Shown here in pieces: positions 7,150-64,000 of a stretch of DNA of 64,000 bases. A program made the position numbers and the translations under genes. The notes under the pieces are model-generated. The model searched no databases. It worked only from the letters and a program-made list of their open reading frames with translations, and was not told the DNA's origin. Source of the DNA: Chlorokybus atmophyticus (Eukaryota > Plantae > Mesostigma and Chlorokybus algae); the NCBI GenBank assembly GCA_009103225.1, contig RHPI01000575.1:295527-359526 (forward strand), read 5' to 3'. Within the stretch, counting starts at the first letter, position 1; every line of letters begins with the position of its first letter.

Positions 7150-9308
7150 GCCTGTCGTCTGAAAGTTGACGCCTTTGCCAATAACCATCAGAGCTAAGCA
7201 ACATTTGACCAAGTTGTTGTGACTGTGCTTGTCAAGGCGGAGCCGACAGAGTATGGTCGCAATTGGTGCTGGGTGCACTGGCAGCTTGAAGTTACTGTGG
7301 AGGAAGTGTTTGCCAGCAAGGATCTGATAGTGCGGGCGGTCGACGAGGCGTTCAACATGCAGCCCGAGCGGCCGACGTGGAACCTCCTCGGCATGATGAA
7401 CAACTGCTGGTACCGCGTGCGGGTCAACACCGTCAAGGGCCCGGACCAAGAGCTTGCGCTGTCCTTTCAACATCCCACCGTGCCCGGCACCGGCAAAGGC
7501 GGCTGGATGGAAAAACCAGAGGAAGACCAGCCTGAGGTACGTGCGCAGCTCAGAGTGTACTTGCAGTTAAACTAGTATGACAGTGTGCACAGTGATGTGT
7601 GCACGATGGCTGCGTGTGTCGACATACACGCATGGATGTAAGCCTCCACAGGCTTCTACACTCACTGGTCTTCATGAATGCGTGCACCCAGCAAATTGAA
7701 GTCATCCTTGCACTGTGCTTAGCACAACATCCCCACTTGCTCTGCTGCAGATTGCTGGTGGCAAGCATGGTGCGAAAATCAAGATGGCGGAGGTGCGCAA
7801 GCATACGAGCGAGAAGGATGCATGGTTAGTGCTCGCTGGGAAAGTGTTCAACGTGACGGATTTCCTGAAGGATCATCCAGGCGGCGCCGAGCCTATCCTC
7901 ATGAATGCCGGACAGGACGCCACGGACGAGTTCGACTCCATACACGACGCCATGGCCCGCCAGATGACAGCAAAATACTACATTGGTGATCTTGACCCTG
8001 AAGATCAGGTCAAGGAGTGTCACGTGTTTGTCGCATGTGTGATGCGTACTGTGTGTGAGCGCGCGCACTCGCATGCATGTACATGCGTGCGTGCGTGTGT
8101 GTGTGAGTAGTGAATTGTATGGCAACTCATGTCGTGGTCAGGATGAAGAGGTTGAGGAAGTCCCGAAGCAGGATGACAGGGGGAGACCGATCGCATTGAA
8201 CCCACGCAAGGCGCAGCCGTTCATGCTTGAAAAGAAGACGCAAGTGTCTCATGACACGGTGCGACTGCGGTTTGCGCTGCCCTCAAAGGAGCATGTCATG
8301 GGCTTGCCGGTCGGGAAACACATCACCGTCAGCGCGCGCATAGACGGAAAATTGATCGTCCGGCCTTACACGCCTGTGTCCAACGATGACGAGGACCAGG
8401 GCTTTATACAGCTAGTTGTCAAGGTGAGAAGACGTTATTGTTCACACCAGTCTTCTTCGAGCTGTCATGGTCAGATGTTATCATCGCTCTCTTCGAGATG
8501 ACATGAACTGCCTGTGGGAATAGGTGTACCCGCAAGGGCGCATGAGCCAGCGCTTGCACTCGCTGAAGGTCAGCTGTGTTTATCACTCCTTTTTGTTGGA
8601 TACTTCTGGTGTCTTACGTCACATGTTGTGTACTTGCTTCCAGGAAGGTGATACCATCGACTTCAAAGGGCCTGTCGGGCGGTATGTCTACAAAGGCAAC
8701 GGCGAGTTTGACTTGGGCTCCAGAACGTTGCATGTGAAGCACGTCGGCATGGTAGCTGGCGGCACTGGCATCACTCCCATGTATCAGGTGTGGTATTGCT
8801 GCCAATTTGCTTTCAAATGGGTGCTATAAAACTTGGCTGCAACAACACTCACACACAACATGCACATGCACATGTGCGCACATGCGTATGCCTACCCAGG
8901 CACATATGCACACGTGTGCACGCATGTGGAGGGCACGAGTACAACATGTTGTTGCATGTGGTGCAGGTCATGTCGAAGATCGTGCGGGACAAGGATGACG
9001 CACCGGACGTGAAGCTCGTGTTTGCAAACAAGACGGAGGATGACATCCTTCTACACAATGAGCTGGACCAGATGGCATTGGACAACCGCGACAAAGTTGG
9101 CGTGTATCACGTTATCAGCCACCCCAAGGCGGATGATTGGTCGCAGGGCAGAGGACACATCAATGCAGACATAATCAGGGATCACCTGCCTCCACCCGGT
9201 GAAGACACTCTTGTGCTTATGTGCGGACCTCCAGGCTTGATTGAAAAAGCCGTCAAGCCTGCACTCCAGAAATTGGGCTACCTCAGCAACAATGTTGTTT
9301 CTTATTGA
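4674..9308 (+). CDS. NIA: Assimilatory NAD(P)H nitrate reductase (Moco, dimerisation, cytochrome b5, FAD and NADH domains), about 16-17 exons; start codon tentative
   Basis: Ordered exons: '[17 protein letters not shown]|KHPLNAE', '[11 protein letters not shown]', '[11 protein letters not shown]', '[14 protein letters not shown]', '[16 protein letters not shown]', 'WCWVHW', '[14 protein letters not shown]', b5 'FLKDHPGG', 'GLPVGKH...RPYTP', '[14 protein letters not shown]', 'CGPPGLIE'; stop at 9308. Confidence 0.96.
7087..7145. repeat. (CT)n microsatellite in an NR intron
   Basis: About 29 CT units seen directly. Confidence 0.95.
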
Positions 9309-11429
9309 ACACTCCAATCGTTCTTACATTCTTGTAGCTGCACATTAGGAGTACATTAGGTCATGCTGTTTGATCAAGTTGTTGCGTATGTATCAAAGGG
9401 CATGCAGCTGTGGGAAACTAGCACAATCGCGACGTCATCAGCGATGCTTTGAGCCATTGTATAAGGTATAAGTCATAGGGCAAAGAAGCAGTGTATGGTG
9501 AGTGTGGCATTCACCCATTCGTGTGTTCCGTCATGCAACATGAGAATTATGTGGCTGATTATGTGGCTTCCAAGACCCACATGTCGGCACACATGTGGGT
9601 CTTGGAACCACAATTGGGTACCCAGACTGCCAGCAGTCGTTGTTGTTATTATTATGTTGCTGCACTCCTACAAGCGCCCGCCCAAACAACATTGCCCGTA
9701 GGCTACGGGCCTTAGTGGCATTCGGCTTTACATACAGCAGCAATTGAATGCTTGCACAAGCGCCACATGCCAATGCCGCGCCTATCACAATCAAGTCGCA
9801 CACTGGCAATGTTGCCGGTTATTGCACATGCATGACTGCCTTACTACTTGCTAACTCAATGACTGTGTGGACATCATTCTCAGCGGCATTCGCGCTGGCA
9901 CCTTCTGATTCCCTGCAGCCATGGCTTCCGTCATACCACACAACTTACAAGACCTGCTACACAGCCTCAGCCGCCATCGCTGGCGCTCATTTGCACAGCA
10001 CTGCAAGCATCCCCGCCCTCCGCCCTAACCTGCCTGCGCTTACTGCTGCTACGCTCTATCCATTGTCTGGCCCTCGGCCTGCAAAGCCTGCGTCCTTACC
10101 CCTACCGCCTGTTGTACAAGCCTGCTTTGCAAACTCGACACTACTTGCCCTTAGCCTGCCCTGCTGCCTCTGCCCCTCCCCTCCCCTCCGCCTTGCACCA
10201 GCACTTAGCTAGTGCACATAGGTTACTTAATGCCCTTGCCCTTTTGATTGAGCTGCCAGTGCCCGTGTGCTTGCTGGTGCTTGTGCTGCCTGTGCGTGCG
10301 TTGTGTCAACGTTGGGAAAGCCTATGCATGCATGCCTGTATGTTTAATAGGGTTGGGTTCAAAGTTTGTTGTGATGAGATAGGTAGGCAGTGAGTAGGTT
10401 GACAGCCTAGTGGTGAATGTAAGTAACTTGGTGGTGTGTGGCTTGCGTTGCATGTCTCACACTCTCATGCAACACAGTGCATGTCATAACTTTTTGCTTT
10501 GCCTATACTGTACATTAGGGTAACCGGATCTTAATTGGGACAATATCTCAATGTTGATTGCGGACGGCGCCTGCTAGGACCAATTTTCGCGTGTGGTGGT
10601 GTGTGTTGGCGGCCGATGGGTCCTCTATTGGTACATGCTAATTGCTGGTGACCAATGGGTGATTACGACCAAACAATAGCGTAATTGGTTACATATTGGC
10701 GCCAATACAGCTTGTCAAGCACACACATTGTTGGTCATGCGTGCAAGGTTGACTTCACTTTGAAGTACCAACAATTCTAGAGTGGTTAGTCAAATGTGTC
10801 GCTTTTATGCTGACATGACTGTAGCCCTTGTCATTTAGAATGTGTGTGTGTCCCTTAAGAGGTTTATGTAGCTGAAAAACCATATAAAGATAAAGGCGGG
10901 CAAAGTGCGATTCTAGCTGTCCAGATTTAAGAGTCGTAAGATAACAACGTCTGCAAGGTCGGTTGCTTGTAATAGTTGTGCTGTGTTGTGCTGGGGGTTG
11001 TAATTGCAGAGGAGGTGTTGGGGGTTGTTGCTGCAGGTGGTAGGTGTAGCTGCTGAGGCGGTGTTCATTTTCCCATTGGTAGTTACCACTGTATTGGCTA
11101 CGAGCTCGTGATAAGCATGCAAAAACTCCCCGCCAATCACAGAGATACATTGCAATGTGTATACACATCAACATGCATACACGCACATTGTTAATCATAC
11201 ACAACCGTGGGTTAGTAACCACGCTATACAAGTTGTTCCGCCTGCTGACCGGGTGAGTGGATAAACTCAATGGCTGATCACAACTATGCTATCACCAGGC
11301 CTGCCCTTTTAAAAAAGGTAAGACATTAATGTAGCAAAGTGCATGTGTGTGTGCATGTGTGCGCAGACTCTAGACGAGCTTGATGAAGAACCCTTGGCGT
11401 ACGTACAACGCAGAGAAAACGGGCTTTGA

Positions 11430-45203: not shown

Positions 45204-46198
45204 ACAACGCATATGGGTGCATTGCGTTTATTGCAAAATGCATGCCACTTTGGAAGTCTAGCTAGCCGCAGCTGACGTCAGATTCCTCTGCCTGTCCACG
45301 GGAGACGAACAACAACAAGGTGCCGGCTGATGTGACTTTGTAACGGGTTACGCCGAGTCGCCGTTCCGTACTCCTGAGTCAGGAGTCCTGACACAAGTTT
45401 CAGGGCGCGGCGGTTCAGCGCAGGCTCTAGCAACCGGCCAGCGTCCGGGCAACCAGCCGCTCAGCCGACAAAGACTCCCAGCAACGCGTGTATACCAGGT
45501 TATACGACTGAGCAACTTAGCAAAGTAACATTATTATTGTTCACATCAAATACCGACCGGTATGTGTATATGATGGCCGCTGCATCTGCAAATTGGCCGA
45601 TAGTGTCGTGCCCTGACAGTAAGGTACCATGGGATACGATAGGTACTCAATACCATGATAATGCAGGCCTTCACGGTTAGCTCTCCGCGTACAAGCGTCA
45701 GTAGAAGACTGAGTAGAGCGACCAAAAGAGTTGGATAAAGCAAAGATTGCGATATCTAACCGCAATTCTGACAGGTGAAGAAGCGCAGTCAGGGGAAGGT
45801 CAATAAACTGTGTAGAGTCGCACTAAACAGTAGTCAAGTCAGGCATAGCCCGAGTTTGCGATACATAACTGCCGTATTGCAAGTACGCCCTTGAATCCGA
45901 CGTCAGCAGTATTTGGATAACATACACTATGCTACGCGCAATGGCGTCACCATCGCCGTTCAATTTAAGCTTGAGAGCCCTCGTATAAAACCCCCTCCTG
46001 CATGCAGTATGAGAGCCTGCAAGCATTGCGCAGCAGAGCGTTGATACATTGCGAACAAAGCAAGGCAAAGCTTGTGTGGGAGTGCTTCTGCGAACTTGTC
46101 GCCTGAGTTGCTAGCAAGGTGGTTTGGCCTCGGTTGTGTTGGAATTGAGTGACTTGCAGCCAAGTTGACAAGAGAGAGCGGTTGGTACCCTCGCCAAC

Positions 46199-47316
<1,118 letters not shown>

Positions 47317-48839: not shown

Positions 48840-51800
48840 CTATCCAGCTCCTGCCGGCGTCAATCTCCGGCAAGCCAACTCGTGGCTTCTTGTCAGCGCG
48901 CTGATAAGCGTTCGCGGCTCAACAGGTTTGCAAACATAGCTGCAAACACATCAGATAAGCAACGCGCAAGGCGAACAACAAGGTCACATGACCGACGGCA
49001 TGGGTGTAACCACCGCGCACGCGCGCATGTATATAAAGATCTAAGATACTACTGTGTGTGTATACATGTGCGTGTCTGCGGCCACATGCATACATACTGC
49101 GGTACACTTACAAGTCCATTCCAGCGGCCAAACACGCATCAATCTCATCACGCATGGCTGCCGCAGTCACCGCGACGATGACAGGCAAATTGCCCTCTTG
49201 CCTGATGGCCTGCGTGGCTTCGGGGCCGTCGCATAAAGGCTGCAAACCAAAAGATGTTAGTTGCGCACACAGCGCAACTACCAGCAGCAAAACCAGAAAC
49301 ATGCTACATTTCCAGTGGTCAACTAACACAACACATTCACATACCATGTGGTTGTCCATCAAGATGACCTGTCAGCCAGAGACCAGTCAGTGGGCCAGTT
49401 ATGTGCGTTGCAAGGCAGGCTTGTGCCCAAATCGACAACACCAGCACCCCAAACGTACATCATATCGCTGCTGCTGTGTAGCTGCAATGGCCTCCAAGCC
49501 GTTGGCGCAGATGTCGGATTGATAACCCAGCCTGGAAAGCATTCTTCTGAGCACCTGCTGGTTGATGACGTTGTCCTGCGCCGAAGTTGCTGCGTGTCAA
49601 AGCACGGGAAGAGAAGCGCACATGCAACACTCAACACGTGACTGTATGATCGCATTCATGGCTTCAACATTTGAACTCGTACCTCAGCAACGAGGATGCG
49701 AAGCGGGTAGCGAGAGGCCATTGTCTCATCGAATACTGGGATAGAGGCTTGACGTGTGTGCACGCGCGGCGAATTTGGTTTGCCGCTCAGCACGCATTGT
49801 TGCAGAGCATTGAACAACTGCGCACCGCCGAGTATGAGCAGCGCTTGTGAGAACATCCGACCATGTGCGCGTGAGCACACACACAAACACACCTGAGAAG
49901 AGCGCAGCGGCTTGAAAAGGTGCTCCGCTTCAGTGTTGATAGCCTCTTGGCGAACCCCGCCTTGGGGTGTGAGCACAATCAGCTTGCATGCAGCGCCCAC
50001 CTTGGCTATGTCTTGAGGAGTTACCACTTGCGCATCCTTAAGCAGCAAACAGCATGGCACATGTCAGTCGTGCACGCTTGTACCGATGCAAGGCTCTAAG
50101 TCATATGCTTGACACCGTCTGCGCACGCTTCACTTACCAGAATGCACGCAGCAGGACGCCGGTTTTGCAGCATATCCAAGGCATGATCCACGGATGATGC
50201 ATGCAACGGGTGGCAGCCCCATCGTTCAAGAAGCGAGGAAGCAACCCTTTCACTCGCCGGTGCGGTCAGCTGTGAGTGGTCAATAAATGCAACACAAGCA
50301 CAGCATCAGAGGTGATAAGAGGGACTTTCTGAGGAAGCCAAGGCATGGATGCCTTGGCTTCCTCCAATGGCAAGCATAAGAGTGATGGTATCATTACCAG
50401 CAGCACATGGCAGCCAGCGAAGCAGGCTATATGAGTTTGATCTGCACTCGGCCTTCTAACATCCCCTTCCTTAGCTGGGCCCACTTCCAACTTGACATTG
50501 AATGAGAATGTTGCCCCTGTACAGGGTGGTGTTAGTGTCACAAGACATAGTACCTTTGTTCAGCATACACGTCCATACAACGTTCAAGAGCTGGCTGCTG
50601 ACCTGGTTTCTCCTCAGGGTTGCTTTCTATCCAAACTCTTCCACCCTGTCCGTGAAGCATACATCAGTATGCATCTCATCAGCTGAACTCAATATCAGGG
50701 GCAGGCATGTACTCAGTAGTACGCTACTGTGTTGGCCTAGTGTACCTACCATCAGAGTCGCAAGCTTTGCACAGATAGCAAGGCCCAACCCTGCAAGAAC
50801 AGGTGACATGATGTGTAACAATAAGCCAATATCACGACACGATTGGCAACACAAAGATGGGATACAAGGCAAAAAAGCTATTGCGCCCAATGTCTCTCAC
50901 CTGTTCCTGCGAACCTGAACACGCATGCACGCACCCGTGAGTTGACACACCAAAAGGTCCCCCACACGCACTTCAAGTACATGCAATGTTCAGAACCAAT
51001 CAGCAACTCACCTGCGAGTTGTGGATGTGTCGACTTGACTGAAAGCAGTAAACAGCACATGCTGGAATTCTGGAGGGTAGTGACAGAAGGAGCTGAGCTC
51101 AGTACCAGATTGATAGTGCAAAGCACAGCAGTCTTATGTACAAGTGATGCGGTTTGTTCCACTGCACCTAGAGGAACGCCAATGCCGGTGTCGCGCACGG
51201 AAAACTTGAGGACCAACTCTGGCGCAGCTGGTGTAGAGGAGGATGCGTGCTGCTTGGTAGCCGCCTCCAATGCAAGTTGCTCATGATCAACTTCCACTTC
51301 AACGACAACCGCTCCTTCAGAAGTGAACTGTACCCACGGCGGTTCAGGCTTGGTCGCCACAATTGGCATTTGGGTGCTACATATTGCGATTATGTTCTGG
51401 CCGAAACGTACCTTTACTGCATTGCTGACCAGGTTGACCAGGATCTGAACATATGAAAGAGTCACCGTAAGCCTCAACGTGTTGTAGAAAACAGACAATG
51501 GTGCCACACTTGCAGTACTGCGTTGCGACTGAAGCTGCACACCAACCTGGCGTAACCTGCTGACATCACCGCACAGCGATGCGGGGACATCAGGCTCCAC
51601 ACGGTAAGCCAGATCCAGCCCTTTGTCAGCGGCTTGCGTGGCCACGAGATCCAGGCTATCTTCGACGCATCCAACCACATCGAACACAGACTTCTCCAAC
51701 ATCAGCTTGCCCGCCTCAATCTTAGAAAAGTCTGCAGATGACGCATCCAGCAAACAACATTCACGCACACGTTCAAGACGTAGCCAACACGACATAACCA

Positions 51801-54520
51801 CACGCATCAGCGCCTTACCTAGGATGTCGTTCACAAGCGTCAATAGCTGGTCACTTGAGCTGCATAAACCAACCAATCAGGCAGGCTGCAGTGCTTTACG
51901 GCGGCCTGCATCAAGCAGATGGTGCTGCTGCTGACCTGCGGATAATTGTAGCATACATACGTTGCTCCTCTGCGAGAGGCTGCGTTTCGAGCAAACAATA
52001 AGCGTAACCCAGGATTGCATTAAGCGGCGTCCTGCAAAATTCAAGGCCTTCAATGCGACAGACAACTCACAAATTACAACACGAGCACATTCTAAACTGA
52101 CAGCTCGTAACAGCTGGCAAATGCAACCTGCACCAACACGCTCCACCTACCGAAGCTCGTGCGACATCTGCAGGCGCAAATGGGAAACGTGTGAGCTGAA
52201 ACAACCCATGACTGGTTGACATGTTCATAATGCAGCGGGTTGATCATTGCAAACGTTGCACTTACATTGGCCAAGAATTGTGCCTTAGCACCAGCAGCTC
52301 GCGTGGCTGCTTCCAGCGCTACTCGAAGTGCTTCTTCTGCTTGTTTGCGATCTGTGACATCCGTCACGGTACCTGCAGGCCACGACATGCCAGGGTACTG
52401 TTATTGAGTTTGGCATGCAACACACGATGGTCATGTTTAAGAGTGCCTGATTTCAACTGCGTACCTGACATGCGTATTGGTTTGCCATCCTGATCGCGAA
52501 TCGCTGAGCCTCGACCGCGAAACCACTTGTACACGCCACTCTTGTGTTTCAGTCGGAACTCACAATCTAGCCAGCCAACACAGTTATAACAGCCAGCCGT
52601 GCCCACGCGGACACTGAGAAGAGCCTGAACTCAGCTTACCATACTCAGCTCCTTGCTCAAGGTGATCGCGTAGTGCCTCCTCAACACGCGGCGCATCCTC
52701 GGGATGAATTCCATATGAGTTATTCAGGTCAATGGGGACACCGTCCAAATCAAAAATCTGCAGCCATCAGCATCATCATATACACATACATACAGTTGCA
52801 ACTGTTGAGCGTACTGCGATTACCGAGCAAACGCTACATGATCACTGCTAATAACCGCATGAACCTGATCTGTGGTTTCCCAAGTCTCGCCCACAGCGAA
52901 GCCCAACAACTCAAGGTATCGCTTAGATCGATAATCCTGCAAAGTTGCGAGTTTTCAGGCATCAGGCATGCAGCAAGTGACTGCCGGAAAGTATAACAGT
53001 CACGCAGACAGTCCTACCTTGCCATTCACCATGTCTATGTCCCACCTGGGCATCGCACACACAAAGTTATGGCGGATGCGCAGGTTGCAATGAGAAAAAC
53101 ATACCACCACAAAGCCTTAGGTATGAAACAGTACTCACATGCCATCTGTGCTGCCACTGACTGCGAGCGACATCCTTTCCTCGCTCACTTGCAATGCCTC
53201 TTGTGTCTGCACATAACATGGCAGTGGTCAAGCTGTCAGACAAAGCCGTTGCTGGAGCCATTTCCAGTGATTTCCCTGCAATGCGTCTGATTTGATAACA
53301 GTCACATCACTGCTGCTAGGGAAAGCCAGAGATTGTTCAATTGAGAGTGTCTGCAACAGTGTAACTCAACAACTAAACTTGCTTTTCACGAGTTGACTAT
53401 GCCACGCAATTGCACGCACCTTCTGCATTTCAGTGTAGTCCACGTCGACTCCGTGCCATATCTGCGCACCTGATGCATCCTTTGGCTGCGCTATCGTGCG
53501 GCATCTGACCCACACAACCTGAGTACGACAATCATCCCAAAGCTCAGTCTATGGTTGTTAACTACGCAAACTGCAAAACATGACAAAGAAGCTCACCTCT
53601 CCATTGGGCCGCAAGTCACGATGCTTAAAGTCCAGAGGCTTGAGAGTTTTCCCGCACTCCTCGAGCTGACGGTAAAACTCCGCCTGCACAGTCATGAGGG
53701 TAGCACATCGTTAATAATCAACGAAGGTGAATTATCAAGAATAAGTACCAAGAAGCCTAAATTTGGCCTTCTCTCCCAACAGCAGTTAACAGCTGAACAA
53801 CATTGTGGGCTTGGTGGTTTTAACATCGCATGTGATCAGGAGGTTTACTTTATCATCGGGATGGAAATGGTCGCCCCGCTCCAGACTTTCTGGCGTGTGG
53901 CCAGTGTGTTCGAGTGCGCCCGCCGAAACAAACAGCAGGTTTACTTTCCCCGTCGCATCAACCCTGGCTTTGTACATCCCACCGGGCATCGCTTCCGCAA
54001 ACCGCAACAGGTCCAACTCTGCCTCCCGCAGCTTGCATTCCAGATCCCTGATTACATCCGCCTAGCAGATGATAAAAAGCATGAGGTTGAACCTTCAACA
54101 CCAACTTCAGAATTATTTCTATGGCTGCCTATCAACTCACCTGGCGATAGATGGTTCTTGTTTCAACAGCCCGTGTGGCAATCCACGACATCACAGACGC
54201 CGCATTGGCGCTAACGACATGAGCCGCTTGAAGGATCCACATGAGACACTGGGAGTACTGACTGATGGGAGCCTTTCTGTGATTTTTGGCCGCTAACGCA
54301 TTGCGCACCGCAGCTTGAGCCATTTGTAACAGCGTAACTCCAGCCACTGCAGGTTGTAACATCGCTTATTGCAAGTTAGTGTGCGTACACACTTGCTGTA
54401 AGCAACAAACAAGACTGAACGTACCTGCAATGAGAATATGCACTGTAATGCCTGCACGCACAAGCTCCGAAACCGTGCAGCTGCATGCTGGACACTCCAC
54501 AGCTGCAGCTTCCATCTGTG
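48840..54520 (-). CDS. Hybrid sensor histidine kinase: PAS - PAS/PAC - HisKA - HATPase - degenerate REC - REC; 5' end uncertain
   Basis: 'FAEAMPGGMY...HFHPDD', 'HPEDAPRVEEALRDHL', 'EFRLKHKSGVYKWFRGRG', 'KAQFLAN|MSHELR', 'DFSKIEAGKL', 'NLVSNAVK|FT', 'VRDTGIG', 'GLGLAIC', 'RILVAE|DNVINQQVL', 'ILMD', 'AVTAAA', 'KPVE'. Confidence 0.92.
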
Positions 54521-56653
54521 TGAGCATGTTTCCGTTCCGGTTAGCAAATACAGGTGTATGCTAACCATCGACGTTAGCAAACTGCACGTACAAAACAGTG
54601 GCTACAGTCGTCACTGCAATCCACCAGCATACGAGCAAAACCACAAGCAAGAATTGGCAAAGTTTAACACGCACGCAAGGCCAAGCTGGCTCACTAGCGC
54701 TCACCTGTGCAACTCAGAATGGACGAATGGGGACAATTGCAATGCCTGTCGACCCTGGCTGCCAGGGCGCAGCAATAGAGATGAATGTTCTCTAACTGCT
54801 TTATTTGCTTTCACACAGCTATGGCTCTACTTTCAACTGAGCGCTACTAAGCATGCCAATGAGCTCATTAAGCTGCCATAGCAAGCAGCTGGCTCACTGC
54901 CAATATCACACAAATCCGCCCACGCAATGCGGCCAACATATTTTTACGCCACCTGAAGCCCTAAAAGCTTAAGCCGTAAGCCGTAAAAGCTTAAGCCTTC
55001 GGTCCATTTTGTGCATGCTGCCGATGTACATGCTTCACTGCAAAGCTTGCGTGGTTAGGAGAGGGAGTGAAGCTCGCCCTCCAGCAACAGCTATGACACA
55101 ATGGGACGAGGCTCTGCTGCTGCTCTCTCCTACAGTATCCTGCCTGCCTCTCCCTCCCCGTACACCAACACCGCCGGAGGCGGCGGCGGGCAGCTTACAG
55201 CTGTAAGCAGACTCAGCTAAACCCTAGCCCCGCTCCACACCTCCGCCTCCGCCGCCTCCTCCTCCTCCTTAGCCGCCGCGGCCCTGCTTAACAGACAGTA
55301 CCTCGCGACTACTGCGCTCCCCGGCACGCACACCAGCGCCCCGTGCCTATAACGGGACGGTTACTGACGCTGCTAAGCCGTGCCGTCACAATCACCGGCT
55401 ATAAACATATCCGGGCACTGAACGTTCATTCGTGCCGAGTTGCGCCCGTTTCAGGACACGTTCTTGACTACCTGGTACATGTGTACTGCAATGTGGGCCT
55501 CTATTGCCCACTCAGTGCCAGTGGCAGCTTAATGCAAGTCTGACACTGACAGTCATCGATTGCGACGGCAGGGAAACCGTTTAGATGCACACGGCAGAGC
55601 GGATACGGTGCGCGTGACAGTGACATTGTGACACGGAGTTGACGTTGTAACGTTAAGGGTGCGTGACCCGCGGATTGAAAATTAGGCATGCTCGTACTGA
55701 GTGCAAGCCAATATGGCCGTGTACTATTGGTTGAGAATGACTATTCACGGACGGCTGCCTCAATGACGGCTCTGTGACCGTCTTTCTGACGGCCCGTGTC
55801 AAAGGCTGACAGAGCCTCATAGGCGCCTTCAATCAATCAATGCAGCAGAGGACCAGGTAGTACCGCTGGCGGAGGTACTACCTTGCTTGGTCACCCGCAG
55901 GAAAATCGCTGACAAGGATACCATCGCAGGTATCGCGGTACTACACTGACAGGGTCTGTGTCCCGTAGCCTACCGTAAATAGTGTGAGAGACAGATCCTG
56001 TCGTGATGCAGAGTCACAGTGGCATGCAATGCACGCTTGAACTTGTCCATTCTTTGGCCTTTAGCCTTTGCACCACACCCGTTAACATACCACAAAAGTT
56101 TAGGGTTTGGTACGCGCGCGGTACAGGCGGTGCCGCAGACGCGTACTGTACTTTAGTGAACTGAACTGAACTGAACAGCGTACTGCTCATGCCTTGGTAA
56201 ATTTCTTTCCGGCTTGGCAGGCCTTCTGGCGATTGTTATTGTTGGCGGCGGCGGCAGCGGCGGCGTGGAGGAGCAGGAGGTGGGAAGAAGGTGGGGAGCA
56301 GAGGAGGGTCAAATAAGCAGGGATTTATTTGCATAGCTTAACGCCCAGAAGAAGGTGGCGGGGGGTGAAAAGGGGTCGGTGGGTTGTGAAGAGGAGGAGG
56401 AGGAGGGAGGTAGGGCGCCGTTAGAGCAGGGGGTGCGGAGGAGGGCGGGAAGATATGCCAATTCACCTGCTTGGACAGGTGGGGAGGAAGACATGACAAT
56501 CAACTGGCACGGTTCAACTAATGTATGCTCGCACCGTCCGCTCTTACTAGATGCATCTGCTGTGCAGATTGTACGCATGTTTGCACAGTATGTTGTTTGG
56601 AGAAGTTTATGTACATTGAGCTTGATGTGTAGCATACATTTGCAGGGCCGAAA

Positions 56654-59600
56654 ATGCAGTCTTCATCAGCTCATGACTCACTCAACATTACAAGCGCACA
56701 ACGAGTCGTTGTGGAGCGTTTGGGGTTACAAACAACGGAGGAGGCACGCGCACAACTACACGCATTGCAGCAAGGCACACCAGAATGGTTGACAGCTCGG
56801 GTTCGTCGCTTGACTGCGTCCAACTTCGCCGCTGCCATCAATAATTATCCCGCTATGAATGCACAAACACTAGCAACCTACATGCTTGCAAAGATCAAAG
56901 GTGAGTCCGCATTCGCTTCTCTTCTCCTGACCATCTCGCGCAATGGTTACATATTCACATATGCAACTCTCCTCATATGTGTGCAGACCCTAGCGATGAA
57001 CCGCCGCGCACCCCGGCAATGGTCTTTGGGATCAACAATGAAGAAATAGCGGCGCAAGCATACTATGCACATGTGCAAGCGCAAGTAGAAGCAAGTGTGG
57101 GTTTGGAGATGCGTAAGACGGGGTTGCACGTGCACTCGAGGCACCATTGGTTGGCTGCTAGTCCTGACCGCGTTGTCTCGCACAACGATGAATTGTGGTT
57201 GTTGGAGGTGAAGTGCACCTTGGACCCTCAACCATGGAGTGCATTGCCGAATCATGTGGTGGATCAAGTGGTCGGCCAAATGGCCATCACGGGGTACAAG
57301 CGTTGCGACATCATTTGCTGGAGCAAATCCGGCAAGTACAGCGTGTTCAGCCTGCTCTATGATGAATGGCATAGGCGACATTGGGGCTGCACGCTGCTTC
57401 CCAAGCTTCGGCATTTTTACTTTACTTTCTTTGCTCCGCACGCGGCGGTGTTGTTGGAGCCGCCGCGACAACATCAAGACGCATGTCCTACTGCGCCACA
57501 ACGCAAGTGGAGTGCGCAAATAGATACGCCTCGCATCGTCGAGGAGCTTAGGAGCATGAGAACTTCTGGTATGTATCACATACAGTAGATGCATCTGAGA
57601 GGTGCATCTGTCCCTGTGCATCTACACGGATGCATCTACTCGTTACAGGCACATGCGTCCGCACAGTAGATGCATCTCGTTGAATGTTTTGCATAGATGC
57701 TTCAACTAGTTGTAAGGTAGTAAATCGTGTGACTGTGGTAACTTTGTATGCTCACTTCACCGCTTCACAGTGCCTACCTCACATACCAAGCCTCTTCCCC
57801 CGCAAGACATCCCCCCCTCCCCCCCTTGTCACCAGCAGGTGTATCTGTGAGAAATGTGGTTGCATGGATGCATCTACTGCGTGATTGACATGCTTTCATG
57901 TCACATGCATGTAAGACAACGGGGCAAGTGACTGAGTATTTACTTGGCAGCTCATAGTCCCTTTTGCAGGAGATTACAACCTACCTGCCCTCGCTGTAGG
58001 GCAATGCGTGCGCTTGAAAACAAAGTTTCAACAACGTGGGACAATCCATGCCGTGCAACCAAACGGTAAAGTGGTAGTCGCTTGGGAGTACACGGGTGGT
58101 TTGCCGAGCACGAAAGCCATTGCAGCCACATCCATACATGCGTCAATTGCAAGTGAGTCGTTGATGGAATGCCTTGTCTTGGTAATGGTGCAAGCTTAAT
58201 GATCATTACGCCTCGCCTCGTAGGTGAACACAACACTCCCAAACACGAGGGTGACAAAGTGCAAGTGATTGGAGGCTGTCACGTGGGCATAATTGCTGAG
58301 GTGGTGAGATTGGGACCACTACAAAGCCATGTGTGTTTGGAAGGCGCATCCATTGTGCAGATACGCAACAAAATGTTGCAACACATATCACAAGGTTCGT
58401 GTATGTTTTATCATTACGCACATGCCCATCGAGTGACCATAGCATGTTGCTTAAAGACACATTGCACACCGCTTGTTGTCACTCAAAGTGCTGCATCCGA
58501 AGGTCACAATACGTCTTGCAGAATTAGATGATGACAGTGAACCGCATGTGCAACATGACACTTTGGAGGAGCATGTTGTAAAGGTGACCGAGTTCGAGCA
58601 ATGGTTGCACGAGTACCAAGTGAAGAATGGAGTTGATGTGGTTGTTGTACAACGGCGGCAAGCACGTGGCGATGCCCCCTACATCAAGGCGCGCACGTTG
58701 TATGCTTGTCGAAGGTATGTATTTGGTTGCTAGTAAACAGCAGATGCATCTATTGTGTGCCTGCATGTCGGGGCATTCGTTAGGATGCATCTAGCTGGAT
58801 GCATCTACTGGTTGTTGGGATACCCACAATCTCTCACCGCTTGTTTAGAGGGGATGCACGGCAATCAAGGCAGCTGTCACATCACAAGCCCATTGATTCT
58901 GCCAAAGTTGGGTGTCGGTTCAGCATGACAATGACGGAATACGTGGACCAAGAGGAGACATGCTACGTGCGTATAGCAACCCGGCACACCAACCACGAGC
59001 CAGGTATATGATAATGTGTTGCCTGCTTGTCTTACATGCAAACACGCCGATACGTTAAGAGATGTATCAGCTTGACTTCGTGGTAGGCTCTGCTGAGGAT
59101 CAAAAGTACCTGCTACCGCATCCAGGACTCCGTGAGGAGACGCGCATGTTGTTGGAGTTGGGACTTAAGCCACAAACGGTGTTGAACAGTGAGTTGATCA
59201 CAGTAGTTGTGCATGGTGCCATTGTGTAACAACCTCGAGCGCGAGTTACTAGAGGTTCAATGTGATGGTGGGCTGATCTATGCCAATGTGTACAGTGCTC
59301 GATCGTAGAAGCACTCAATTTGATGGAGTGACATCCACGATGCGGGAGGACTATTCCAATCGACGCTGTAGACTTAGCAAAGAAGACATCAACAACATCT
59401 ACAAAGAAATGAGGAGGGCTAAAGCAATTGCCCCCTCAGATGCTGTTGCTGTTGCCAAGCTAGTAAACTCTCTACCAGATGGCATTGTTTTGCATTACAC
59501 GGCACCCGGTGTTGATGAGACACACGAACAGCACACACCTTTCGTCATCATTATGCAAACAGAGTTTCAAAAACGCATGCTGGGGCAATTTGGCTCTAAC

Positions 59601-62275
59601 ACGGTGCTCTTAGACGCTACAGGCGGCACAAACTGTTGGGGCTATCAGTTTTGGGCAATGGTGGTCAAAGACGACTTTGGAAACGGTACGTGTGCGCATG
59701 GAGCTGTACAGATGCATCTAGCTGTTGGCATACTACGTGCTATGTGTTGCTTGCTTGGAATAGTCTGCATGTATACAACTCGAAGGCACGAACGCATTCA
59801 ACAAAATGACATCAAGCGCATTCACCTTATGTAGTGCCCGCACATGTAATTGGACGAGTGCATGTGACTCTCACATACCTTAAGCTTCAATCCACGGTTA
59901 GGTGCATTCACTGGTGTTGTGGATGAAGCGCGCATAAAAGACCAATCCACCTTTTGTAGGGGTTCCGGTAGCTTTCATGGTGAGCGAGCACGAAGATTCT
60001 GAAACAGTGAAGCTGTTTCTCAATACAGTATACGCGCGCATCCCAAACTTCAAGCCTCGTTGTGTCATGATGGACAAGTCCCTAGCGGAGATGAAAGCGG
60101 TCGAGGAGATCGGCTCGACAGTGTTGCTGTGCTACTTTCACTTGCTACAAGACTGGGAACGCTTTTTGCGCAAGGGGACAACCCATGTCGTAGGCAAAAA
60201 GATGCGCTCGGATGTGCTGGCAAGCGTGAAGCTGCTTAAGCGGTCCGGCAGTGTGGACCTGTTTGCACACAGAGTAGAAGCGTTCATGCAGGAGTATGCT
60301 GATTACGCGGAGGTGATCAAGTATCTCAAGCAAGAATGGCTTCCTGATCGAGACAAGTCAATAAAGTCATAAATTACAGTTATAAGCATTCTAGTTTCAC
60401 TATGGAACACGCATGTTTGTACGCACTTACAAGCTGTTGCTAGATGCATCTACTGCTGAAACGCGTTAGCGCACTAGAATGGCCTCAATCTTATAGTACC
60501 GTGGTTTGCATGCAGACAAATGGGCTGATTGTGGACGTCAATTTGAGCACGAAGGCATTGAAACCAACAACCTATTGGAAAGGTTCTTTCATAGTTTGAA
60601 GTACACTTTCCTTGGGGGCAAAGTCAACCGCTGCATTAGCGATTTGATTGTTAAGTTGCTTGAAGACGTTGTTCCTCACTTTATCCGCGAGCGCAAGCTC
60701 AAGGTGTCTGGACGTGGCGGCAAGAACGAGGCACTGCGCGCTCATGAGCGTAGAGCTCATGAAGTCGACTACCTTGTCAAGAGTGATAAAGTGCAGATTA
60801 CTGATGCCACCATAGGCATGTGCATGGTTGCCTCCGTACCAGACGGCACGAGTGTCGTCTCAGAGCGCTGCTACACTGGATGTATTGCGGAGCTGACTTG
60901 TGAATGCCCTAGCACAGACACGGCATATGCCAAATTTTGCAAGCATATGGAGGCGGCATTATTAGTGCATCCGTTTACCTCTGAGATGCGGACGGCCGCG
61001 GCGGATTATCTGTTGCGTAACAACGGCATACGTTTGCAGCCAAACGGTCTCATAGCCGAGGTGGCTAGCATGCTAGACGCCAACTTGATGTTCACTTGCG
61101 ATCTCGCGAACACCTTCTGTACCTGCGCCGATCACGATTTCAATGGCGTATGCTGTCACTTGCTTGCTGCAGCTCGGGCGAGCCAATCAGCTGACGTATA
61201 CGCGGGTAAGTCCATTACAACAGATGCATCTGATGTATTTGGTTGTCATTCATGTATGTGTAACACGACTGTTGTGTCACACATACGTACGCACAGAACT
61301 GAAGCTTAGGAATGAAGAGGAGCCAACACTCAACCTTCGGCGATCGCCACATGCACCAAGCCGTCAAGACCCGCGTCTTGACCCGCTTACTGACGATGTC
61401 GACCCTTCCATCGATTGCGCACGCAGCGTGTTGGATGACTTGCATGACGGCCACTCAAGTACGGTGCATAAGTTGCTGACATGTAGCTTATTGATCATGC
61501 ATATGCCATTGCATACAAGTGCGGTTGCAATTATGGCTTGCTTGCATTACGTGTATAAATACTCACACACGGCATGTTGGTTTTAGGCGCGGAGCATGAC
61601 GAGGACTTGCGCTGCAGCATCCTGACATCGGTATCCACCATCAAGCAGCGTGTCAAGCATATGTCACGTTCCACAGCTGCTGAGGTGGATGAGTCTCTTA
61701 AGGCTCTCATTCAGCAGTTAGACGCTTCCTTGCCACGGCTTTTTACAACTATCCGGCGACAACATAAGCAATGGAGACGGCAGCAATCGGACAGAGTTCA
61801 ACGGTCGTTGTATAACCGCACTACACCTAACTCTGCACAAGAAGCTCGAGGTGCAGAGGCACCAACAAATGTGGGTGGCTTTCACAAGACTCAGGGACCT
61901 GGAAGACCCAGAGCTCAAAGTCGCAACGACTTTGGTGCTTACCAGCGCGATGGAGCTGGTAAAAAGGCGTATCCCCTCAGACGCAAAAGAAACAAGAACG
62001 AAAACCCTCAGCACGCTGCAGTGCCTCCGGATGTTACAACAAGCAAGGGTGGTGCCAAGCGTAAGGTCAAAAACGTCTCGGCTAGGGCAGAGGCAAACGC
62101 CTCCACCCGTTGTGCATCACAGCCCGTGCCCACAGTTACGACACCGCAACGCCCCATTTTCTCCACTCAGGTGTACAGCCCAATGCCAGGCTTCTCTCCG
62201 GCAGCAAAGACGACTTCGCAAGGGGTGCGGGGCAACATGCGGCCTACCAACTTGAACTTCGATGCAGCAACATGA
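56654..62275 (+). CDS. Predicted spliced fusion: YqaJ/lambda-exonuclease + KOW-like repeats + WRKY/FAR1-like zinc DNA-binding domain + MULE DDE transposase + 2 SWIM fingers; start uncertain
   Basis: YqaJ 'QGTPEWLTARVRRLTAS', 'LAASPDR', 'LEVKC', 'QVVGQM'. MULE 'VLLDATGGTN', 'VMMDKS', 'LCYFH', 'ETNNLLERFF'. SWIM 'CECP...FCKHM' and 'CTCA...VCCHL'. GT-AG junctions keep frame at all but one checked intron. Confidence 0.8.
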
Positions 62276-62570
62276 ATATCATAAAGTGGTGGTAGAGGAG
62301 GTGTGCTGACTGCTCATACATCCGCACATGAACTCAACTTTCTCTTGCAACTTCGACCACAACCAACTGTAGGTGCTTCTAACCTCTATAACCTCATGAG
62401 CATGCGGTTTATATATGGCGACAAACTCAAGTCATCCGAGAGGTGAATGACGAGAAGTGGCAAATGTTCTTGTTTACACTTGCACAAACAGTTCATTCAT
62501 GAATGCTATTGTTGGTTACAACATGCACGATGCTTGATGATGTCTACTTAGATGCAAAAGCCACGGTTTA

Positions 62571-63020
62571 GGTAGATGCATCTGCAGGACAACCAGCGAG
62601 ATCTACTTAGATGCATCCCGTTCTGGGTCTAGTTAGATGCATCTTGTCATACCCTGCCAATTTGCTGAAGAAACCTCCTCTAAGGCAGGCTTTGAGCAAG
62701 ACCCTGCCTGGTAAAAAGTTAGGGTCTAGGTAGATGCATCTGCTGAACAATCAGCGAGATGTACTTAGATGCATCCCGTTTTGGGTCTAGCTAGATGCAT
62801 CAAGTCATACCCTGCCAATTTGCGGACGAAACCGCCTCTAAGGCAGGCTTTGAGCAAGACCAAGCCTAATAGAAAGTCAGGGTCTTGTTAGATGCATCTA
62901 CTGACTTAGTGACGTCTTTTTCGATGCATCTCGTTATACCCAAGCCAAATTGCTGATGAAACCGCCTCCCAAGCACGCTTTGAGCCAGACCCTGCCTAAT
63001 TAGAAACCCGGGTTTGGGTA
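62571..63020. repeat. 158-bp tandem repeat (two full units plus one diverged), each carrying 2-3 GATGCATC palindromes
   Basis: Units start at 62571, 62729 and about 62887. Confidence 0.9.
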
Positions 63021-63119
63021 AATGCAACCATAAAGATGCATCTTGTTGGATGCATCTACAGCAAAGCTGAGTGCTACGTGTGGGAACAGATGCATCTACT
63101 GCAAAGCAACATGTCAAGG

Positions 63120-64000
63120 CTACTCAGAGTCGGAGGCCGCCTTGCCCACTCGCCTCACATGCTTTTTGAAACACTTGTTCTCGCAAAAGAAGCGCCATCC
63201 GCCCTTCTCTTTTTCACAGCACCCGCAAAACCAAGGTGTACTGTTGGGGCACAAGCCACAACGCTTGCGTGCCGCCTGCCGTTCCATCCCAGTCAACTTG
63301 CGGCCTTTCTCGTTGTACACAAGTTTGCAAAGCCTATGCTCCTGAACGCACACACACATACGCACACAATGAGCGGCATGGGCAGCATCCCCACAACATG
63401 CACGACTGAACTTGATTGCTCAATGGCAGGGGTATATAGTTACAGCATGTTGCCGCTGACACTCACATGCCCTTGCGTATCTTTCAGAGTCAGGTGCACT
63501 TCCTTCAAATTATGATCGATAGGCTTGACAATGACCTGCTTGTCCCCCTCGCGAGATGCCTTCTTGACCGACCGCCCGCCACCGGCGGCGACAGCTTTCT
63601 GCATTCACAACTTTTGCATCTAAGGCATATTACAAGTTCACATAATGAAAATGATATCCACAACACTCACCGTTGGAGCCTCTTGTTGTTTTGTAGATGC
63701 ATCAGCACCAGTATTATCTGCCCTTTTAGCACGCTTGCGGCCGGCCTTGTTCTTCTGCTGCATTACATATTGATGTTTAGCAACACATATACGCATGTCG
63801 CATACGTAAGCAGATACTCACCGTGGGAACCTCTGCCTCTGCCTCTGCCTCCGCCTCAACACCCTCATCGACTTTGACTTTAGCAGCGCGCTTGCGACCT
63901 GTTCGGCACTTCTCCTGCGTAACAAACGTGGGTAAGGATGTTACAATGGCGCCGTTTGCAAGTATGCACGCGACCAATTTTGACAAATACATACACAAGC
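63120..64000 (-). CDS. 3' exons of a convergent gene: basic NLS-like repeats and a C-terminal piggyBac-type Cys-rich zinc finger; 5' part outside the window
   Basis: Phase-0 exons 'EKCRTGRKRAAKVKVDEG...VPT', 'QKNKAGRKRAKRAD...APT', 'KAVAAGGG...TQGH', 'EHRLCKL...RKRCGLCPNSTPWFCGCCEKEKGGWRFFCENKCFKKH...*'. Confidence 0.7.

What the first reader, a model, noticed from the sequence alone, without database searches (positions are those of the whole stretch)
56654..62275. Lambda-exonuclease (YqaJ) fused N-terminally to a MULE transposase
Seen: the YqaJ exon ends at a GTATGT donor (57569). Both possible splice routes (direct to 57970, or via 57771-57838 and 57951) stay in frame with the downstream exons through to the MULE DDE and two SWIM fingers. 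Nuclease motifs (SPD, EVK, QxxGQM) and D-D-E/CxxH look intact. Established: MULEs capture accessory domains such as Ulp1, and YqaJ-like nucleases occur in some other DNA transposons. I do not know of this N-terminal YqaJ-MULE-2xSWIM arrangement. Inference: a transposase with a built-in 5'-3' resection activity that could steer donor-site repair, gene capture or copy-number gain.
Basis: partly seen in the sequence, partly recalled or inferred. Interest (0 to 1): 0.8.

Follow-up and report, generated by a model that had tools for sequence, protein, structure and literature searches.

The report
Exonuclease fused to a Mutator transposase
This algal jumping gene encodes one long protein that joins a phage-type DNA-end-chewing enzyme to a Mutator cut-and-paste transposase. 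Related elements elsewhere have the same layout, and I found no description of it, so the element may carry its own tool for steering repair of the breaks it makes.

Summary
A two-exon YqaJ/lambda-exonuclease domain (56654-57568) with intact SPD, E-x-K and Q residues lies upstream of a MULE transposase on the same strand. The transposase has D, D, CxxH, E and two SWIM fingers.

The fusion therefore rests on comparison with relatives:
- A metagenomic relative (P0045, 1504 aa) encodes YqaJ, two KOW-like barrels, MULE and two SWIM fingers in one uninterrupted ORF. That ORF sits between perfect 250-nt terminal inverted repeats.
- Two intron-bearing relatives (L002, L008) join the YqaJ exon to the first barrel exon by a 103- or 107-nt phase-1 intron. 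This is the same alignment position and phase as window intron 57569-57969, and it leaves little room for a separate promoter.
- Exon 3 of the window has no start codon of its own.

One caveat applies to this copy. The junction at 60353-60515 has no canonical splice pair that keeps both the frame and a conserved segment, so the copy may be slightly defective.

More distant MULE relatives (Tribonema, L010) show no YqaJ. The papers I could search mention YqaJ only as a separate ORF of ISL2EU transposons.

I rate it a new variant of a known kind. A role for the nuclease in resection and repair steering is inference. The scan had already flagged this stretch and two other copies in the same genome.

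The parts
56654..56900 (+). Exon 1: start codon and the N-terminal YqaJ motif (GTPEWLTARVRRLTASNF). It ends in phase 1 at G|GTGAGT.
   Evidence: tblastn of P0045 residues 112-162 matches it. It also matches the L002 YqaJ ORF (E 1e-10).
56987..57568 (+). Exon 2: the YqaJ/lambda-exonuclease core (SPD, E-x-K, Q) plus a linker of about 50 aa. It ends in phase 1 at G|GTATGT. If the intron is retained, a TAG follows 6 codons later.
   Evidence: Pfam YqaJ, E 1.1e-12. All invariant columns of 15 relatives are kept. A profile of the domain hits LHK-exo 3SYY at E 2.5e-19 and lambda exonuclease 1AVQ.
57569..57969 (+). Intron 2 (401 nt, GTATGT...TTTTGCAG, phase 1). It links the nuclease exon to the first barrel exon and carries four GATGCATC words.
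   Evidence: Relatives have an intron at the same alignment position and phase: L002 2177-2279 (103 nt) and L008 430-536 (107 nt). In P0045 the same region is continuous ORF.
57970..58152 (+). Exon 3: KOW/SH3-like barrel 1. It has no in-frame ATG.
   Evidence: It aligns with barrel 1 of L002, L007, L008 and P0045. One search shows there is no unspliced start.
58224..58394 (+). Exon 4: KOW-like barrel 2 (GDKVQVIGGCHVG).
   Evidence: Alignment. The P0045 counterpart folds with pLDDT 91-95 and matches Spt5 KOW pairs. The Pfam KOW match is only sub-threshold.
58522..59188 (+). Exons 5-7 (58522-58714, 58849-59003, 59087-59188): a WRKY/FAR1-like C..C..HxxH finger and a short helical linker.
   Evidence: Collinear with P0045 residues 560-746 (weak HSP). 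Exon 7 matches Tribonema L006 at E 5e-7. There is no Pfam hit, so the domain name is my inference from the residue pattern.
59296..59685 (+). Exon 8: first half of the MULE RNase-H-like core, with the first catalytic D (LLDATGGTN).
   Evidence: PF21056 at 29-30 bits against a cut-off of 27.2. D, T, G, G, T and N are invariant.
59960..60352 (+). Exon 9: second catalytic D (MMDKS) and the CxxH motif (CYFHLLQDWER). The 3' end of this exon is uncertain.
   Evidence: PF10551 MULE, E 5e-4, below threshold.
60353..60515 (+). Problem junction (163 nt). AGACAA stands at both edges and one GATGCATC lies inside. No canonical splice pair sits in the register that homology requires.
   Evidence: Enumeration of splice pairs. 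Relatives are continuous here.
60516..61205 (+). Exon 10: the catalytic E (TNNLLER) and two SWIM fingers.
   Evidence: Pfam SWIM at 21.3 bits against a cut-off of 19.6. T, N, N, L, E and R are invariant in five loci.
61297..62275 (+). Exons 11-12 (61297-61458, 61587-62275): a C-terminal tail with basic stretches, ending in TGA.
   Evidence: Exons 10-12 are closed, with only the terminal stop. The LDPLTDDV motif is shared with P0045 (read).
62556..63026 (.). 158-bp tandem repeat, each unit carrying three GATGCATC words. It may be a subterminal repeat of the element.
   Evidence: That it belongs to the element is not shown.

Best explanation
The locus is a nearly intact copy of a Mutator-like DNA transposon. 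Its single 12-exon gene encodes a composite transposase of about 1,320 residues. Reading from the N-terminus, the parts are:
- a YqaJ/lambda-type 5'-3' exonuclease;
- two KOW-like beta-barrels;
- a WRKY/FAR1-like zinc finger;
- a MULE DDE/CxxH core;
- two SWIM fingers;
- a basic tail.

What is shown:
- The domains are present and collinear on one strand, and their catalytic residues are conserved.
- The fused layout recurs in four independent loci.
- The intron joining the nuclease exon to the next exon is conserved in position and phase.

What is inferred: the DDE core excises the element in the way shown for Muta1, leaving hairpins on the flanking DNA. The tethered exonuclease then resects 5'-phosphorylated ends at the break. 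This would push repair away from end joining and towards annealing or homology. Two routes fit that picture: single-strand annealing between the two target-site duplicates, giving scarless excision, or copying from the sister chromatid, which restores the donor copy and gives a net gain in copy number. The KOW-like barrels and the zinc finger would supply nucleic-acid or chromatin contacts.

This particular copy may not make full-length protein, because one junction (60353-60515) cannot be spliced canonically in the conserved register.
For: Domains:
- Pfam YqaJ, ZSWIM1-3 RNase-H-like and SWIM all score above their cut-offs.
- The nuclease profile hits LHK-exo, mimivirus R354 and lambda exonuclease structures.
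- All invariant nuclease residues are kept.

Fusion:
- P0045 is one 4515-nt ORF with YqaJ at residues 116-289 and MULE at 853-952. Two SWIM-type CxC...CxH motifs follow. It is collinear with the window exons and lies between perfect 250-nt inverted repeats.
- L002 and L008 carry YqaJ, the barrels and MULE on one strand.
- In both, a 103- or 107-nt phase-1 intron sits 7-8 residues before the 'VG..VR' start of barrel 1. Window intron 57569-57969 has the same position and phase.
- Window exon 3 has no start codon.
- Eleven of the twelve exon junctions are canonical GT-AG, and about 1,320 codons are free of stops.

Mechanistic background:
- Muta1 forms hairpins on flanking DNA, and its precise excision depends on the target-site duplication (PMC5499845).
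- The unrelated ISL2EU transposons also carry a YqaJ gene (PMC4122938).
Against: - There is no transcript evidence for this copy.
- The 401-nt spacer could in principle hold a promoter and a short first exon. One search lists 34 ATG-donor combinations that are in frame, for example ATG 57748 with donor CAG|GTGTAT.
- The junction at 60353-60515 lacks a canonical in-frame splice in the conserved register.
- No terminal inverted repeats or target-site duplication were found in the window. No duplication was found around the L001 repeats either.
- The exonuclease activity and its role are untested. Hairpinned donor ends are not substrates for a lambda-type exonuclease until they are opened.
Confidence: 0.75

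Rival explanations
1. In this genome the element has two genes. A stand-alone YqaJ gene ends at TAG 57586. A separate MULE gene is transcribed from a promoter inside 57589-57969 and uses a short first coding exon spliced to 57970. This would resemble the layout of ISL2EU, where YqaJ is a second ORF.
For: - A stop lies 6 codons past the donor.
- The spacer is 401 nt, against about 105 nt in relatives.
- Thirty-four ATG-donor combinations reach exon 3 in frame.
- Another first-stage note read a sister copy as 'bipartite' (s1-177361, unchecked).
- ISL2EU is a precedent for a separate YqaJ ORF (PMC4122938).
Against: - The intron position and phase are conserved in L002 and L008, where 103-107 nt leaves little room for a promoter.
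- P0045 is a continuous ORF.
- Donor GTATGT and acceptor TTTTGCAG are as good as the gene's other splice sites.
- Exon 3 has no ATG.

Both products could coexist, through intron retention or an internal start.
Confidence: 0.12
2. The locus is a dead relic. The architecture was once a fusion, but this copy is a pseudogene that makes no full-length transposase.
For: - No canonical in-frame splice exists across 60353-60515 in the conserved register. The 163-nt stretch is flanked by AGACAA repeats, as an insertion would be.
- No terminal inverted repeats were found in the window.
Against: - About 1,320 codons contain no stop.
- All other junctions are canonical.
- Every catalytic residue of both enzymes is intact.
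- A weak in-frame alternative exists (60312|60497).
- The right end of the element may lie beyond the end of the window.

This rival concerns the state of this copy only. It does not bear on whether the fusion is real.
Confidence: 0.4
3. It is a domesticated host gene derived from a MULE, like FHY3/FAR1 or ZSWIM genes, and not a mobile element.
For: - No terminal inverted repeats or target-site duplication were found in the window.
- The best Pfam match is to the ZSWIM1-3 RNase-H-like family.
Against: - Relative L001 has perfect 250-nt terminal inverted repeats.
- Other first-stage notes report several copies in this genome (unchecked).
- The distribution is patchy, and copies in different samples are highly divergent.
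- The full DDE triad is kept.
Confidence: 0.05

Closest known systems
Mutator-like elements (MuDR/MULE superfamily; FAR1/WRKY finger + DDE with CxxH + SWIM), for example Muta1 and MuDR MURA
   Same: - RNase-H-like DDE core with a CxxH motif.
- SWIM finger after the core.
- A WRKY/FAR1-like finger before the core.
- Long terminal inverted repeats in relative L001.
   Different: - It carries an N-terminal YqaJ exonuclease and two KOW-like barrels.
- It has two SWIM fingers.
- A survey of 1,631 MULEs mentions only extra zinc fingers and DNA inserts as structural variation (PMC6446971).
ISL2EU (IS4EU) transposons of the PIF/Harbinger-ISL2EU-Spy group
   Same: A eukaryotic cut-and-paste DDE transposon that carries a YqaJ exonuclease (PMC4122938).
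   Different: - In ISL2EU the YqaJ is a separate ORF, and the transposase is of the PIF/Harbinger type with a THAP finger.
- Here the nuclease is part of a MULE-type transposase polypeptide.
- I could not test whether the two YqaJ domains are related.
Lambda exonuclease / LHK-exo / mimivirus R354 (PD-(D/E)xK, YqaJ family)
   Same: A profile of the domain matches these solved structures (E 2.5e-19 to 1e-7). The SPD, E-x-K and Q residues are conserved.
   Different: - It is fused to a transposase rather than paired with an annealing protein.
- It has no annealing-protein partner in the same ORF.
- Its oligomeric state and activity are unknown.
MULEs with captured accessory domains (Ulp1 protease in KI-MULEs, PHD in Rehavkus). 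I cite these from my own knowledge.
   Same: A Mutator-superfamily element that has gained a non-transposase domain.
   Different: The gained domain is a DNA-end-processing nuclease, and it is conserved with an intact active site in four divergent loci.

Membership tests
MULE / Mutator superfamily transposase | RNase-H-like DDE core recognised by family profiles | tested here: met
   PF21056 scores 29-30 bits against a cut-off of 27.2 on exon 8. PF10551 MULE is below threshold on exon 9 because the domain is split by an intron. Relative P0172 scores 38 bits.
MULE / Mutator superfamily transposase | Catalytic D, D, E with a C/DxxH motif between the second D and the E | tested here: met
   DATGG, MMDKS, CYFH and TNNLLER are all present. 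The first D and the E lie on columns invariant across relatives. The second D and CYFH are identical in the window and P0045. The E lies beyond the problem junction at 60353-60515.
MULE / Mutator superfamily transposase | Long terminal inverted repeats and an 8-11 bp target-site duplication | tested here: inconclusive
   No inverted-repeat pair flanks the gene within 50000-64000, but the window ends 1.7 kb after the gene. Relative L001 has perfect 250-nt repeats and no obvious duplication.
MULE / Mutator superfamily transposase | SWIM zinc finger C-terminal to the core | tested here: met
   PF04434 scores 21.3 bits against a cut-off of 19.6, with two stretches. Both CxC...CxH motifs align with P0045.
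MULE / Mutator superfamily transposase | WRKY-GCM1/FAR1-type DNA-binding finger N-terminal to the core | tested here: inconclusive
   A C..C..HxxH pattern is present in exons 5-6 and in P0045, but there is no Pfam hit.
YqaJ / lambda-exonuclease family | Match to the family profile above the curated cut-off | tested here: met
   PF09588 scores 48.9 bits against a cut-off of 22 on exon 2 alone. A profile hits 3SYY, 5YET and 1AVQ.
YqaJ / lambda-exonuclease family | PD-(D/E)xK active site (D of SPD, and E-x-K) | tested here: met
   SPD at residues 58-60, E73, K75 and Q93 of exon 2 lie on invariant columns.
YqaJ / lambda-exonuclease family | Processive 5'-3' exonuclease activity on duplex ends | not testable with these tools
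   This needs a biochemical assay.
ISL2EU transposons | PIF/Harbinger-type DDE transposase with a THAP finger, and YqaJ as a separate ORF | tested here: not met
   The transposase here is MULE-type. YqaJ is in the same ORF in P0045. The feature definition comes from PMC4122938.

The most novel reading that the evidence does not exclude
A subclade of algal Mutator transposons has built a lambda-type resection nuclease into the transposase itself. The enzyme that cuts the element out would then also dictate how the donor break is repaired, by annealing or by homology instead of end joining. That would give scarless excision or replicative gain. ISL2EU elements would have reached the same solution independently.
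Probability: 0.3. Interest if true: 0.8.

Novelty: new variant of a known kind. Interest (0 to 1): 0.62.

Why it matters
Cut-and-paste transposons are thought to leave repair of the donor break to the host, and that choice decides whether the element gains copies. A transposase with its own end-resection nuclease would be the first case in which a eukaryotic DDE element visibly carries the repair-steering activity in the same polypeptide.

Two further points add weight:
- An unrelated superfamily (ISL2EU) also recruited a YqaJ gene, which suggests a general selective benefit.
- The L001-type element has an intronless ORF and perfect inverted repeats, so it offers a directly testable system.

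The finding also adds a new domain architecture (YqaJ, two KOW-like barrels, MULE, two SWIM fingers) that current transposon annotation would split or miss.

Tried and rejected
- Metagenome scans with the YqaJ exon and with a MULE alignment found nothing. A viral-contig scan also found nothing.
- Word searches with P0045 returned only P0045 itself.
- The Atlas search gave only generic MULE clusters, with scores of 0.77.
- phmmer of exon 2 against PDB found nothing. The profile search was needed.
- A global MAFFT alignment of all exons against P0045 was too messy to use.
- Stand-alone YqaJ relatives on contigs L003, L004, L005 and the P0019 contig have no MULE neighbour, so I set them aside.
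- The tree of the MULE core does not resolve whether YqaJ-bearing elements form one clade, so I make no claim about a single acquisition.
I think it less likely, because relatives place the junction 7-8 residues before barrel 1.
- The joined spliced model was never sent to any search or fold tool. Exons were searched one at a time by reference. In scripts they were concatenated only to check frame and stop codons.
Full report
**What is in the sequence**

The region is eukaryotic, with multiple exons and GC near 50%.
- Pfam recognises a YqaJ domain in 56989-57567 (E 1.1e-12, 48.9 bits; cut-off 22).
- It finds a ZSWIM1-3/MULE RNase-H-like core in 59298-59684 and 59962-60354.
- It finds SWIM fingers in 60518-61204.

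GTATGT starts at 57569 and TAG lies at 57586-57588. The direct route 57568|57970 and the mini-exon route are both in frame and free of stops.

**Gene model**

Using GT-AG sites and reading frames, I obtain 12 exons:

| Exon | Coordinates |
|---|---|
| 1 | 56654-56900 |
| 2 | 56987-57568 |
| 3 | 57970-58152 |
| 4 | 58224-58394 |
| 5 | 58522-58714 |
| 6 | 58849-59003 |
| 7 | 59087-59188 |
| 8 | 59296-59685 |
| 9 | 59960 to about 60352 |
| 10 | 60516-61205 |
| 11 | 61297-61458 |
| 12 | 61587-62275 |

Exons 1-8 close without a stop. Exons 10-12 close with only the terminal TGA. Most introns are phase 1.

The exception is 60353-60515.
- Relatives read straight through here. L002 has 'NWLPCATHWAHWGRA' where the window has 'EWLPDRD K WADCGRQ'.
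- The 163 nt that would have to be removed begin with AC or end with AA in every register that preserves this join.
- AGACAA stands at both edges.
- The only canonical pair that stays in frame and keeps most of exon 9 is a weak GTGATC donor at 60313 with the acceptor at 60497. It deletes 15 conserved residues.

This copy may therefore carry a recent defect, a lineage-specific insertion, an assembly error or an unusual intron. I cannot tell which.

**Is the nuclease fused to the transposase?**

I relied on comparison with relatives.

A HMMER search of exon 2 against 1.84 billion representative proteins gave no close relative; the best hit was 36% identical. I Pfam-scanned ten of the longer listed hits, and one of them, P0045 (1504 aa), has YqaJ at 116-289 and MULE at 853-952.
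- P0045 is a single uninterrupted 4515-nt ORF on a 49.7-kb metagenome contig.
- It is collinear with window exons 1, 2, 4, 7, 8, 9 and 10.
- It sits between perfect 250-nt inverted repeats (L001 8104-8353 and 15239-15488).

A second relative, L002, was reached through YqaJ hit P0012/P0157.
- It has a YqaJ ORF, both barrels and the MULE core on one strand.
- The YqaJ exon ends in phase 1 at G|GTGGGT (2177).
- A 103-nt intron ending TTTGCAG leads in frame into barrel 1.

A third relative, L008, has the same arrangement with a 107-nt phase-1 intron (430-536).

In all three intron-bearing loci, the junction lies 7-8 residues before the conserved 'VG..VR.K' start of barrel 1:
- window: 'G|DYNLPALAVGQCVR'
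- L002: 'V|LPAPTFQVGSTVR'
- L008: 'G|PAVFQVGSIVR'

An intron of about 105 nt leaves little room for a promoter. Window exon 3 has no in-frame ATG and cannot be entered unspliced.

This makes the fusion the ancestral and most likely present state, and it favours the direct splice route. A two-gene reading of the window copy is not excluded. The 401-nt spacer offers 34 ATG-donor combinations that are in frame, and intron retention would give a stand-alone nuclease.

**Domains**

Nuclease:
- It keeps every invariant residue of 15 relatives, namely E18, S58-P59-D60, E73, K75 and Q93 of exon 2.
- A profile of the domain hits LHK-exo 3SYY (E 2.5e-19), mimivirus R354 and lambda exonuclease.

Between the nuclease and the transposase:
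- Two small barrels are conserved in all the loci.
- In a model of the P0045 segment, barrel 2 has pLDDT 91-95. The pair matches Spt5 KOW2-3 and KOW6-7 (E about 1e-4), and single KOW or Tudor domains.
- Exons 5-6 carry a C..C..HxxH pattern like the WRKY/FAR1 finger of MULEs, but no profile hit supports the name.

Transposase:
- Of the transposase motifs, DATGG and TNNLLER lie on columns invariant across relatives. MMDKS and CYFH are identical in the window and P0045.

**Distribution**

A profile word search with the MULE core found 32 relatives.
- One is a partial Chlorokybus atmophyticus gene model (P0192). It is the window's nearest neighbour in a tree (94/84 support) but only 32% identical.
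- Another is a Tribonema minus fragment.
- The Tribonema locus and the L010/L011 clade show no YqaJ in the available flanks.
- L007 begins at barrel 1, at the end of its contig.

The YqaJ-bearing loci sit in an unresolved part of the tree, so single versus multiple gain is open. Other agents' notes name the genome as probably Chlorokybus. I did not verify this.

**Comparison with what is known**

Full-text searches found YqaJ in eukaryotic transposons only as the second ORF of ISL2EU (PMC4122938). No paper links YqaJ or an exonuclease domain to MULEs. A survey of 1,631 MULEs reports only extra zinc fingers and inserts (PMC6446971). The locus meets the tested criteria for MULE and for YqaJ. It is not an ISL2EU element.

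**Mechanism (inference)**

Muta1 transposase makes double-strand breaks with hairpins on the flanking DNA. Its mostly precise excision depends on the flanking target-site duplication (PMC5499845). Lambda-type exonucleases resect 5'-phosphorylated duplex ends to 3' single strands; this is established knowledge.

A nuclease tethered to the transposase could therefore resect the break ends once they are open. That would favour annealing between the duplicated target sites, or homologous repair from the sister chromatid. Nothing here tests this.

**Verdict**

The fusion is well supported by four loci, but no transcript was seen for this copy. The architecture is a new variant of a known kind.

Noticed in passing
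window 53472-63703: The palindromic word GATGCATC occurs 24 times against 1.8 expected, and all 24 lie in this 10-kb stretch. It sits in introns 2, 5, 8, 9 and 10 of the gene, upstream at 56550, and in the downstream repeats. Relatives L001 and L002 have none. Another note reports a different private word in another transposon of this genome.
   Followed up: partly
window 62556-63026: A 158-bp tandem repeat of about three copies lies just downstream of the gene. Each unit carries three GATGCATC words. It may be a subterminal transposase-binding array.
   Followed up: partly
window 60353-60515: A 163-nt stretch is flanked by AGACAA on both sides and is absent at this position in L002, L008 and the Tribonema relative. 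It looks like a lineage-specific insertion or a young intron without canonical ends.
   Followed up: partly
window 63120-63365 (- strand): A convergent ORF with a Cys-rich CxxC...CxxC...C..H tail was flagged by another note as piggyBac-like. Pfam gave no hit.
   Followed up: partly
L001 8104-15488: This 7.4-kb element has perfect 250-nt terminal inverted repeats. Between the left repeat and the transposase ORF it carries a second ORF (8360-9412, 350 aa) with only a weak DUF7047 match. No target-site duplication was seen.
   Followed up: partly
P0001, P0002, P0004 (best YqaJ relatives, 600-835 aa): These proteins join a similar YqaJ domain to a long C-terminal region with no Pfam match. This is a different and also uncharacterised YqaJ fusion.
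   Followed up: no
window 45965-47066: A long (GA/TC)n microsatellite contains an N. It produces spurious ORFs of about 300 codons on both strands.
   Followed up: no
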